From contig JAWQFM010000001.1 of assembly GCA_033442325.1 (NCBI GenBank), positions 265,376 through 329,375 on the forward strand: a stretch of DNA of 64,000 nucleotides, read 5' to 3'. This stretch comes from Salpingoeca rosetta. Lineage: Eukaryota; Protista; Choanoflagellata. Under the pieces are notes generated by a model, which had not been told where the DNA came from, did no database searches, and worked only from the letters and a program-made list of their open reading frames with translations. Below, piece by piece: positions 4,301 to 4,925 of this stretch; position 1 is the stretch's first letter, and the number at the start of each line of letters is the position of its first letter. A program made the translations under genes and the position numbers.

Positions 4301-4925
4301 GGATGTACTGGAAATCGCCCTTCTTAGCGTCGAGGAGGCGGAACCAGCCCTCGCGGTGGCCATCCTCAAACAGCTCAGCCAGTGGGAAGGTCATGGAGCC
4401 CATAAACTGCGAGCGCCGCAGCTTGCTGTACTCGGACACGACGAGCTTGAGCTGCCTGTTCTCCACGTCGCCCGTGCGCACCTCCCAGCGGAACGTCTCG
4501 TTGAACATGGGGTTGACGGTGTTCTTGCGGACATTGGACTTCTTCTTGGTGGCCTTCTCGTCTGGGGTGAGCCAGATCTTGAGCTGTGGATCGGCGGTGT
4601 TGTTCTTGTTCATGGCAATGAGATCGCGGCCCTCGCGAACCGTCACGGTGAGCACGCAAAACGCAGACGCCTTCTGCACGCGGATGTCCAGGAAGAGGCG
4701 GCCGCGGTTCTGACGGAAGGCACGACGGGCAAAGCCGCGGCCAAAGTGGCCCACGCCCTTGAGCGTCATGGACTTGTCTGCAGACCCTGTTTGCGTCTTG
4801 AGTTTGGCAATGGCCTCGTCGATGGTCATCTCGCCCTCGGCGACCATGCGCATGGCAGCGATACGGTCATCCTGGCTCAGCTTGGACAAGTCTGAGAGGT
4901 TGAAAGTGTCGGCTCTCTTTGCCAT
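1338..4925 (-). CDS. Conventional-type protein kinase C (pseudosubstrate-C2-kinase-AGC tail) with C-terminal SH2 domain and no C1 domains; about 7 exons
   Basis: C2 exon ([31 protein letters not shown]...[10 protein letters not shown]). Kinase motifs [68 protein letters not shown]. Hydrophobic motif FRNFSF. SH2 [34 protein letters not shown]. Confidence 0.93.

What the first reader, a model, noticed from the sequence alone, without database searches (positions are those of the whole stretch)
4330..4745. cPKC-like kinase whose pseudosubstrate abuts C2, with both C1 domains missing
[11 protein letters not shown] resembles the cPKC pseudosubstrate (RFARKGALRQ). It runs directly, within one exon, into NRGRLFL, the start of the C2 domain (cPKC ERRGRI). 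No Cys/His C1 motif is visible anywhere in the gene. Several C2 Ca2+-ligand Asp positions also look substituted ([10 protein letters not shown]; [13 protein letters not shown]). Inference: the kinase is DAG/phorbol-insensitive and possibly Ca2+-insensitive, and may be activated through its SH2 instead.
Basis: partly seen in the sequence, partly recalled or inferred. Interest (0 to 1): 0.7.

Follow-up and report, generated by a model that had tools for sequence, protein, structure and literature searches.

The report
C1-less protein kinase C with SH2
A single-celled relative of animals encodes a protein kinase C that has lost both its lipid (DAG) sensors and its calcium site. It keeps the self-inhibiting pseudosubstrate right next to its C2 domain and ends in a phosphotyrosine-reading SH2 domain, a natural rewiring of a classic signalling enzyme whose function is untested.

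Summary
Window 4240-4925 (minus strand) is the first of seven coding exons of a ~727-aa kinase. In that one exon lie a start Met, a two-helix hairpin, a basic Ala-centred motif ([10 protein letters not shown]), and six residues later a conventional-PKC-type C2 domain. A hinge, a PKC catalytic domain with its C-tail motifs and a C-terminal SH2 follow.

- **No C1.** No C1 domain is found in any frame of the window, even at E<=10.
- **Calcium site.** Four of the five Ca2+-ligand Asp are replaced (N, D kept, E, S, Q).
- **Family.** At least 23 full-length proteins from craspedid and acanthoecid choanoflagellates, including Monosiga brevicollis, share the design. None has C1 and none keeps more than 2 of the 5 Asp.
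- **Pseudosubstrate.** In 20 of 23, the best match to a metazoan cPKC pseudosubstrate profile lies 5-6 residues before the C2.
- **Sister form.** EF-hand-C2-kinase proteins of Salpingoeca urceolata have the same junction with an intact Ca2+ site, so C1 loss came first.

Caveats: the window's own motif lacks one Gly and is not significant alone. AlphaFold does not dock it. The kinase tree only weakly ties the family to animal cPKC. No RNA reads could be obtained. The scan had already noted this gene's SH2 end (s1-442121). I rate it a new variant of a known kind.

The parts
4240..4925 (-). Coding exon 1: start Met, N-terminal helical hairpin, pseudosubstrate-like motif, whole C2 domain and start of the hinge. 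The exon ends in phase 2 at a GTAAGT donor.
   Evidence: tblastn with the Hartaetosiga gracilis orthologue P0001 covers residues 1-223 at 74% identity. Translation is and the junction.
4785..4901 (-). N-terminal two-helix hairpin (residues about 9-47, [30 protein letters not shown]). It is conserved in most of the family. There is a weak SHOCT-like similarity below the Pfam cut-off.
   Evidence: AlphaFold predicts helices 18-29 and 35-47 at pLDDT 74-82. PF22746 scores E 0.052 for the window and matches 6 of 23 members, best E 1.5e-4.
4707..4742 (-). Pseudosubstrate-like motif G62-N73 ([12 protein letters not shown]). The presumed P0 residue is Ala69 (4719-4721). One Gly is missing relative to the orthologues (FARRGAFRQN).
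   Evidence: R67 is nearly invariant in the family. The segment is an island of conservation within a stretch that AlphaFold leaves at pLDDT below 50.
4296..4706 (-). C2 domain of conventional-PKC type (R74 to about P210), beginning with the invariant RGR. The Ca2+ ligand positions read N, D, E, S, Q.
   Evidence: Pfam C2 E 2.5e-23. The best single-domain PDB matches are PKC gamma, beta and alpha C2 at 93-81 bits. Foldseek gives TM 0.88-0.92 to 2uzp, 1a25 and 1dsy.
3822..3981 (-). Coding exon 2: Pro/Ala/Lys-rich hinge up to FTYLK, just before the glycine loop.
   Evidence: ORF translation, junctions AG|A and AAA|GTACGT, and low pLDDT of the equivalent stretch in P0001.
3535..3609 (-). Coding exon 3: glycine loop and the VAIK lysine ([10 protein letters not shown]...YAVK).
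3107..3335 (-). Coding exon 4: kinase N-lobe and hinge ([16 protein letters not shown]...FYAG).
2795..2880 (-). Coding exon 5: catalytic loop ([13 protein letters not shown]).
1810..2555 (-). Coding exon 6: DFG, activation loop (TTTTFCGTP), C-lobe, AGC C-tail with turn motif (RLSPADP) and hydrophobic motif (FRNFSF), a linker, and the first half of the SH2 (WYRPDL...[11 protein letters not shown], from about 1907).
   Evidence: Pfam Pkinase, Pkinase_C and SH2. phmmer against the PDB gives PKC beta 247 bits, alpha 226-230, PKN2 199, theta 198, eta 195 and iota 179. Also.
1338..1539 (-). Coding exon 7: second half of the SH2 and the TAA stop.
   Evidence: tblastn to P0001 residues 667-732 at 71% identity, and the junction.

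Best explanation
The stretch is the regulatory exon of a choanoflagellate kinase descended from the conventional (Ca2+/DAG) branch of protein kinase C.

Shown:
- An ancestral order pseudosubstrate, C1A, C1B, C2, kinase has lost the two C1 domains in frame.
- The pseudosubstrate now sits 5-6 residues before the first strand of the C2.
- The C2 keeps the cPKC fold but has lost its Ca2+ ligands.
- The catalytic domain keeps all catalytic residues and the three PKC priming sites.
- An SH2 with intact phosphotyrosine-binding arginines has been added after the hydrophobic motif.

Inferred mechanism:
- At rest, the Ala-centred basic motif occupies the substrate groove, as in other PKCs.
- The enzyme cannot respond to DAG, phorbol ester or Ca2+.
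- It is instead recruited through SH2 binding to tyrosine-phosphorylated partners at the membrane.
- There the basic pseudosubstrate and the partly retained lysine patch of the C2 engage acidic lipids, and the active site opens.
For: Anatomy:
- The gene has seven GT..AG exons, and exon 1 holds Met, motif and C2 in one open frame.
- Pfam finds C2, Pkinase, Pkinase_C and SH2, and no C1.
- No C1 is found anywhere in the window.

Family:
- All 23 full-length relatives have C2, kinase, Pkinase_C and SH2, and none has C1.
- They come from Hartaetosiga, Choanoeca, Monosiga, three Salpingoeca species, Helgoeca, Stephanoeca and Diaphanoeca.
- The closest transcript ORFs are typed complete and start at the homologous Met.

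cPKC descent:
- The C2 matches PKC gamma, beta and alpha C2 end to end from RGRL. These score 81-93 bits, against 56 bits or less for any other single C2. TM-scores are 0.88-0.92.
- The C-lobe and tail score about 30-50 bits higher against PKC alpha and beta than against novel or atypical PKCs.
- The full-length orthologue model matches full-length PKC beta.
- A tree holding the family with animal cPKC has a higher likelihood than the free tree.

Pseudosubstrate:
- A profile built from 13 animal cPKC pseudosubstrates finds its best N-terminal hit 5-6 residues before RGRL in 20 of 23 members. At most 4 of 2000 shuffles reach that score in 10 members.
- The aligned P0 residue is Ala or Gly, never Ser or Thr, in the family.
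- The same junction occurs in the EF-hand-C2-kinase proteins of S. urceolata.

Calcium site:
- 13 of 13 cPKCs keep four of the five ligand Asp; at the fifth (D254) one of the 13 has Glu. The family keeps 0-2, and D187, D248 and D254 are never Asp.

SH2 and kinase:
- W634, R641 and R659 of the SH2, the catalytic residues and the FxxFSF motif are invariant or nearly so.
Against: - AlphaFold leaves the motif at pLDDT below 50, both in the isolated exon and in the full-length orthologue. There is therefore no structural support for docking.
- The window's own motif lacks the Gly at P-1. This shifts the two Arg from P-3/P-2 to P-2/P-1, and ungapped it does not beat shuffles.
- The M. brevicollis-type subfamily, which includes this genome's second copy, matches the profile poorly.
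- The kinase N-lobe does not discriminate conventional from novel PKC. Identity of animal cPKC to this gene (54-56%) is no higher than to the genome's C1-bearing PKCs.
- The free kinase tree leaves the backbone unresolved.
- No transcript of this very gene could be examined.
- Nothing here tests catalysis, lipid binding, Ca2+ binding or phosphotyrosine binding.
Confidence: 0.6

Rival explanations
1. The anatomy is as described, but the basic stretch is not an autoinhibitory pseudosubstrate. It would be a polybasic lipid- or partner-binding linker, or a decaying remnant. The kinase would then be held off by C2-kinase packing or by its SH2 instead.
For: pLDDT is below 50 for the motif in both models. 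The window has a one-residue deletion and a non-significant ungapped score. The M. brevicollis-type subfamily and the C27 paralogue match poorly. One EF-hand relative (P0259) has Ser at the P0 position.
Against: The motif is the only conserved island in a disordered linker, and R67 is nearly invariant. P0 is never Ser or Thr in 25 family sequences. The site is found by an animal cPKC profile at a fixed distance from the C2 in 20 of 23 members. It has survived two different domain rearrangements.
Confidence: 0.25
2. The SH2 acts in cis as an intramolecular clamp, as in Src or SHP2, rather than as a recruiting module. Tyrosine phosphorylation of the kinase itself would then switch it.
For: The SH2 follows the hydrophobic motif after only about 35 residues. 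The pTM of 0.73 for the full-length orthologue model suggests fixed domain packing.
Against: No Tyr outside the domain cores is invariant or nearly invariant in the 23-member alignment. The linker before the SH2 is at pLDDT below 50. The model's coordinates could not be inspected.
Confidence: 0.15
3. The C2 still senses Ca2+ through the remaining Asp and Glu and neighbouring residues, so the enzyme is Ca2+-dependent but DAG-independent.
For: D193 is kept and position 246 is Glu in the window. The fold of the loops is predicted with pLDDT above 90.
Against: D187, D248 and D254 are never Asp in 25 family sequences, whereas 13 of 13 cPKCs and the three EF-hand relatives keep all five acidic ligands (Asp, bar one Glu at D254). 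By established knowledge of PKC alpha C2 (PDB 1DSY work), loss of D246/D248 alone abolishes Ca2+-dependent binding.
Confidence: 0.07
4. The C1-less model is an annotation or assembly artefact: C1 exons exist upstream, or in an alternative isoform.
For: No RNA reads of this genome could be laid on the gene. A possible acceptor (CGGCAG) lies 5 bases before the ATG, and an in-frame ATG lies 35 codons upstream.
Against: The motif and the C2 are contiguous in one exon, so C1 cannot lie between them. There is no C1 match at E<=10 anywhere in the window, which extends about 59 kb upstream of the ATG. The orthologous complete transcript ORFs begin at the same Met. None of the 23 relatives has C1.
Confidence: 0.03

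Closest known systems
Conventional protein kinase C (PKC alpha, beta, gamma) of animals
   Same: An Ala-centred basic pseudosubstrate (orthologues FARRGAFRQN against FARKGALRQKN). A C2 of the same type and fold directly before the hinge, including the RGR start and the GWFKLL...G.F..P end. A PKC catalytic domain with activation-loop, turn and hydrophobic motifs. About 55% identity over the kinase.
   Different: Both C1 domains are absent. Four of five Ca2+ ligands are replaced in the window, and 3-5 in all relatives. There is an extra N-terminal helical hairpin and a C-terminal SH2. Membership in the cPKC clade by kinase phylogeny is only weakly favoured.
Monosiga brevicollis MONBRDRAFT_39232 (UniRef name 'Protein kinase C') and unnamed transcriptome proteins of other choanoflagellates
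   Same: The same C2, kinase, Pkinase_C and SH2 architecture without C1. The window's protein is 79% identical to the Hartaetosiga gracilis protein over the searched stretch.
   Different: The M. brevicollis protein belongs to a second subfamily with a Lys-rich N-terminus, no helical hairpin and a weaker pseudosubstrate match. Its counterpart in this genome lies on contig C27.
EF-hand-C2-kinase proteins of Salpingoeca urceolata (P0207, P0223) and P0259
   Same: No C1 and the same pseudosubstrate-to-C2 junction (RRRGAVKQPKRGHL). They group with the SH2 family in the quick kinase tree.
   Different: An N-terminal EF-hand pair replaces the helical hairpin. All five Ca2+-ligand Asp are kept. There is no SH2.
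Novel PKC delta/theta, whose C2 domain binds phosphotyrosine (from established literature, not tested here)
   Same: A PKC coupled to phosphotyrosine signalling and independent of Ca2+.
SH2-bearing kinases (Src, Abl and Fes families; Dictyostelium SHK kinases)
   Same: An SH2 joined to a kinase domain on one chain.
   Different: Those are tyrosine or TKL kinases with the SH2 before the catalytic domain. Here an AGC Ser/Thr kinase carries the SH2 after its hydrophobic motif. The nearest SH2 sequences in the PDB are SHP2, Crk and p85, at only 40-52 bits.

Membership tests
Conventional PKC (cPKC) | PKC-type AGC catalytic domain with activation-loop Thr, turn motif and hydrophobic motif | tested here: met
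   Pfam Pkinase and Pkinase_C. TFCGTP, RLSPADP and FRNFSF are present. The best PDB matches are PKC beta and alpha.
Conventional PKC (cPKC) | N-terminal pseudosubstrate with Ala at the phospho-acceptor position | tested here: inconclusive
   Met in the family: 20 of 23 have the best cPKC-profile hit at the conserved site. The window's own motif lacks one Gly and scores at chance when ungapped. Docking is not supported by AlphaFold.
Conventional PKC (cPKC) | Tandem C1A-C1B domains (DAG/phorbol ester binding) | tested here: not met
   No PF00130 match in the exons, in the window at E<=10 or by Cys/His pattern. None of the 23 relatives has it.
Conventional PKC (cPKC) | C2 of synaptotagmin-like (type I) fold placed directly before the hinge and kinase | tested here: met
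   phmmer to PKC gamma, beta and alpha C2 at 81-93 bits. Foldseek TM 0.88-0.92. Position.
Conventional PKC (cPKC) | Five Asp Ca2+ ligands in the C2 loops (D187, D193, D246, D248, D254 of PKC alpha) | tested here: not met
   The window has N, D, E, S, Q. The family has 0-2 Asp of 5. 13 of 13 cPKCs keep four of the Asp, and D254 is Asp in 12 and Glu in one.
Conventional PKC (cPKC) | Catalytic domain inside the cPKC clade in a phylogeny | tested here: inconclusive
   In the free quick tree the backbone is open. The tree with the family held together with cPKC has log-likelihood 9.7 higher, p-AU 0.75. The N-lobe does not discriminate.
Choanoflagellate C2-PKC-SH2 family (unnamed) | Pseudosubstrate-like motif, then RGR and C2, hinge, PKC kinase, Pkinase_C and a C-terminal SH2; no C1 | tested here: met
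   All parts are present in the window's exons. The protein is 74-84% identical per exon to P0001. Window exon 6 nests beside Hartaetosiga in the tree.
SH2 domain (phosphotyrosine-binding competent) | Arg of the FLVRES motif (beta-B5) and the alpha-A Arg | tested here: met
   FFVRES and PREEA are present. The corresponding R659 and R641 are invariant in 23 members. Binding itself was not tested.
SHOCT-like domain (PF22746) | Score above the Pfam gathering threshold | tested here: not met
   13.6 bits against a cut-off of 27 for the window. 6 of 23 members match at E<0.01, best 1.5e-4.

The most novel reading that the evidence does not exclude
Choanoflagellates replaced the animal-type Ca2+/DAG switch of conventional PKC. 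After an early in-frame loss of C1A-C1B that fused the pseudosubstrate to the C2, one branch kept Ca2+ sensing and added EF-hands. The other branch let the Ca2+ site decay and added an SH2. That would create a PKC gated by coincidence of phosphotyrosine and acidic lipid, a direct Tyr-to-Ser/Thr relay in the closest relatives of animals.
Probability: 0.35. Interest if true: 0.7.

Novelty: new variant of a known kind. Interest (0 to 1): 0.55.

Why it matters
PKC regulation is usually explained by three modules working together: pseudosubstrate, C1 and C2. This lineage is a natural deletion experiment. The pseudosubstrate and the C2 fold were kept for the whole history of choanoflagellates, while the DAG sensor, and later the Ca2+ site, were discarded and other sensors (SH2, EF-hands) were bolted on.

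If the motif still autoinhibits, it shows which parts of the PKC switch are indispensable. It would also give a minimal autoinhibited PKC for structural work.

The design also bears on how phosphotyrosine signalling, which expanded in choanoflagellates, was wired to older Ser/Thr kinase pathways before animals arose. The Newton-laboratory paper PMC10586763 states that cPKC occurs in all holozoans and that the C1A-to-C-tail ion pair is 'not seen' in choanoflagellates. Outright absence of C1 would explain that remark.

Tried and rejected
- **Joined protein.** Exons were searched by reference, and the orthologue P0001 stood in for the full length. A script that chained exon junctions timed out and printed nothing, so junctions were read one by one.
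- **N-terminal hairpin.** The ESM Atlas search gave no usable hit.
- **Kinase identity and N-lobe scores.** They did not discriminate cPKC from novel PKC. This is why the representative search and trees were run.
- **C27 paralogue.** Its 3' part reads N (withheld), so its SH2 could not be checked.
- **Literature.** Seven searches found no description of a C1-less SH2-bearing PKC in the held library. Manning 2008, Pincus 2008 and King 2008 are not held and may mention the SH2/Ser-Thr-kinase combination.
- **Rejected.** The two tandem-C1 PKC genes of this genome (L008, L009) are not conventional PKCs, because no C2 lies between C1B and the kinase. The C14 tandem C2 loci are not PKCs.

Full report
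**What is there**

The finding lies on the minus strand. Translation of 4239-4928 gives one open exon that begins [43 protein letters not shown]. It continues through [17 protein letters not shown] and runs without a break into [12 protein letters not shown] and a complete C2 domain (Pfam E 2.5e-23).

The closest full-length relative, P0001, was laid on the window by tblastn, and each junction was then read on its own. This gives seven coding exons with GT..AG borders:

| Exon | Window coordinates (minus strand) |
|---|---|
| 1 | 4925-4240 |
| 2 | 3981-3822 |
| 3 | 3609-3535 |
| 4 | 3335-3107 |
| 5 | 2880-2795 |
| 6 | 2555-1810 |
| 7 | 1539-1338 |

Together they hold 2184 bases, or 727 codons plus the stop. 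The later exons carry a Pro/Ala/Lys-rich hinge and a protein kinase domain. They also carry the AGC C-terminal domain with a turn motif and FRNFSF, and an SH2 domain split between exons 6 and 7.

I did not search or fold a joined protein of these exons. Each exon was used by reference, and P0001 served as a stand-in for the whole protein. A script meant to chain the junctions timed out and produced nothing.

**Absence of C1**

- No exon matches PF00130.
- A Cys/His C1 pattern occurs in no frame of the 64-kb window.
- The six-frame profile search of the whole 55.4-Mb genome finds 13 C1 matches at E<=0.001 and 34 at E<=10. None lies in the window, which extends about 59 kb upstream of the start codon.
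- The motif and the C2 are contiguous in one exon, so C1 exons could only lie upstream of the Met.
- The two closest relatives are transcript ORFs typed 'complete', and they start at the homologous Met ([20 protein letters not shown] and [19 protein letters not shown]).

**The family**

The word search found many proteins with C2, Pkinase, Pkinase_C and SH2. No hit combined C1 with SH2. Twenty-three full-length members were scanned one by one. All 23 have those four domains and none has C1 at E<=0.01.

Their sources are Hartaetosiga gracilis, Salpingoeca infusionum (two copies), Choanoeca flexa, Helgoeca nana, Stephanoeca diplocostata (two copies), S. urceolata and Diaphanoeca grandis. Monosiga brevicollis MONBRDRAFT_39232 also belongs. 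The design therefore spans craspedids and acanthoecids and predates the crown group.

Its protein is 79% identical to the Hartaetosiga one over the searched stretch. This genome has a second copy on contig C27 with RRMGAQKVHRGRLFV, a C2 and a kinase. It groups with the M. brevicollis protein. Its 3' part reads N, so its SH2 could not be checked.

**The pseudosubstrate**

In the orthologues the motif reads [16 protein letters not shown], against animal cPKC RFARKGALRQKN. I built an ungapped profile from the 13 distinct cPKC pseudosubstrates among the retrieved proteins and scanned each family N-terminus with it.

- In 20 of 23 members the best 11-mer is the same aligned site, with its central residue 5 or 6 positions before the RGR of the C2.
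- In 10 members at most 4 of 2000 shuffles reach the score.
- The central residue is Ala or Gly and never Ser or Thr. It is followed by a hydrophobic residue and then basic residues.
- The site is the only conserved island in a linker that AlphaFold leaves disordered.

Three cautions apply.

- The window's own motif has lost the Gly before the Ala (FARR-AFRQN). Ungapped it scores 1.1, which 758 of 2000 shuffles reach, so it is recognisable only through its orthologues. From published peptide-library work on PKC, which I recall and did not check here, Gly at P-1 is favoured. This species may therefore have a weaker pseudosubstrate.
- The M. brevicollis-type subfamily matches poorly.
- AlphaFold gives no support for docking, although with 23 sequences that is weak evidence either way.

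**The C2 and its calcium site**

By sequence, the best single-domain matches in the PDB are as follows.

| PDB match | Score (bits) |
|---|---|
| PKC gamma C2 | 93 |
| PKC beta C2 | 84-85 |
| PKC alpha C2 | 81 |
| Best other single C2 domain | 56 or less |

These are aligned from RGRL to the GWFRLLD..KG.F...P end. The model of the window's exon has pLDDT above 90 over the C2. It superposes on 2uzp, 1dsy and 1a25 with TM 0.88-0.92.

At the five ligand positions, 13 of 13 animal cPKCs have Asp, except for one Glu at D254. The window has N, D, E, S, Q. The 25 family sequences keep 0 to 2 Asp, and D187, D248 and D254 are never Asp.

The lysine patch that binds PIP2 in PKC alpha is partly kept. K197 and K209 are Lys in the window and in about half the family, but K199 and K211 are mostly lost.

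**Is it really of the conventional branch?**

| Test | Result |
|---|---|
| C-lobe and tail exon against the PDB | PKC beta 247 bits, alpha 226-230, PKN2 199, theta 198, eta 195, iota 179 |
| N-lobe against the PDB | Does not discriminate |
| Identity of animal cPKCs to this gene | 54-56%, against 48-57% to the genome's two C1-bearing PKCs |

I therefore used the representative search with the kinase part of P0001 and built a 74-row kinase tree.

- The SH2 family forms a group (SH-aLRT 94), with window exon 6 next to Hartaetosiga.
- It joins, weakly (89), a group of EF-hand-C2-kinase proteins and one metagenomic C1-C1-C2 PKC.
- The animal cPKC clade is separate (95), and the backbone is unresolved.
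- A tree that holds all of these C2-type PKCs on one side of a branch has a log-likelihood 9.7 higher than the free quick tree, with p-AU 0.75.

Descent from the conventional branch is thus the better-fitting reading, but the kinase domain alone does not show it. The strongest arguments remain the type and position of the C2 and the domain order.

The genome's two tandem-C1 PKCs have no C2 between C1B and the kinase. One of them is nearest to an unnamed two-C1 protein (P0147) inside the broader novel-PKC group, which also holds a PKC epsilon representative, and scores best against PKC eta. This genome therefore seems to have no canonical cPKC.

The literature held here says that cPKC emerged in holozoans (PMC13142937). 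It also says that in choanoflagellates the C1A-to-C-tail ion pair 'is not seen' (PMC10586763). Absence of C1 would explain that.

**A sister design that orders the events**

Among the representatives are P0207 and P0223, both complete ORFs from S. urceolata, and P0259. Each has an EF-hand pair, then a C2, then a PKC kinase, with no C1 and no SH2. They carry the same junction:

- P0207: RRRGAVKQPKRGHL
- P0223: QRHGAIKRIQRGHL
- P0259: GRTGSVKKKKRGSL, with Ser at the centre

All three keep all five Ca2+ ligands. If they are sisters of the SH2 family, as the tree weakly suggests, the order of events follows. The in-frame loss of C1 and the fusion of pseudosubstrate to C2 came first. The decay of the Ca2+ site is then special to the SH2 branch.

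**How it most likely works**

Shown:
- The parts, their order and their conservation.
- Intact catalytic residues and priming motifs.
- Intact SH2 arginines.

Inferred from established PKC biochemistry:
- Without C1 there is no DAG or phorbol response.
- With four of five ligands gone there is no Ca2+ bridge to membranes.

Hypothesis:
- The motif autoinhibits.
- The SH2 brings the enzyme to tyrosine-phosphorylated partners.
- Acidic lipids then pull the basic motif and the C2 patch off the kinase.

No conserved Tyr outside the domain cores argues for binding in trans rather than a Src-like clamp, but this is weak.

**Novelty**

The sequences are public, and the scan had already noted this gene's SH2 end (s1-442121). 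In the held literature I found no description of the pseudosubstrate-C2 fusion, the family-wide loss of the Ca2+ site, or the EF-hand sister form. The three 2008 papers on the Monosiga genome and kinome are not held and may list the SH2/Ser-Thr-kinase combination. I rate it a new variant of a known kind.

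Noticed in passing
L007:6218-8564 (G000:C27:48217-50563), minus strand: A second C1-less PKC gene in the same genome. It has a Lys-rich N-terminus, RRMGAQKVHRGRLFV, a C2 with none of the five Asp ligands, and a kinase. It is nearest to the Monosiga brevicollis protein. Its 3' part reads N (withheld), so an SH2 could not be checked.
   Followed up: partly
P0207, P0223 (Salpingoeca urceolata), P0259 (Logan assembly): EF-hand pair + C2 + PKC kinase proteins without C1 or SH2. They have the same pseudosubstrate-to-C2 junction and all five Ca2+-ligand Asp intact. 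P0259 has Ser rather than Ala at the central position. No counterpart was found in this genome.
   Followed up: partly
window 4785-4901, minus strand: A conserved N-terminal two-helix hairpin ([24 protein letters not shown]) of unknown role. It gives weak SHOCT-like hits below the Pfam cut-off in 6 of 23 family members. It is absent from the M. brevicollis-type subfamily.
   Followed up: partly
window 4719-4727, minus strand: The window's pseudosubstrate-like motif lacks the Gly that all close orthologues have before the Ala (FARR-AFRQN against FARRGAFRQN). This is a three-base difference that moves the two Arg one position closer.
   Followed up: partly
L008 (G000:C5:392000-401999) and L009 (G000:C1:1349000-1358999): Two canonical PKC genes with pseudosubstrate (RRGAMKRKKIHEVNGHKF and RIGAMKRRKVHEVNGHKF), C1A, C1B and kinase, but no C2 between C1B and the kinase. 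L008 has a C2-like stretch upstream and groups with novel-type PKCs. A further PKC-like locus at C17:824763-826364 was not examined.
   Followed up: partly
P0260 (metagenome contig, 854 aa): A pseudosubstrate-C1A-C1B-C2-kinase protein of unknown organism with all Ca2+ ligands. In the quick kinase tree it falls on a long branch near the choanoflagellate C1-less group rather than with animal cPKCs.
   Followed up: no
window 5770-5905 and many introns (for example 4140-4235, 5085-5175): Long (GT)n/(CA)n microsatellites lie upstream of the gene and in its introns. They create many spurious Cys/Val-rich ORFs in the mechanical ORF list.
   Followed up: no
window 7653-14327 and 6063-7643, minus strand: A very long open frame (2224 aa) plus a 526-aa frame directly upstream of the kinase gene. 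Both are rich in low-complexity Ser/Ala/His/Gln runs and presumably belong to a separate large gene. They were not analysed.
   Followed up: no
window 4926-5030, minus strand: An in-frame ATG lies 35 codons upstream of the conserved start, with no stop between them. A CAG acceptor-like site lies 5 bases before the conserved ATG. The upstream stretch has no counterpart in the orthologues.
   Followed up: no
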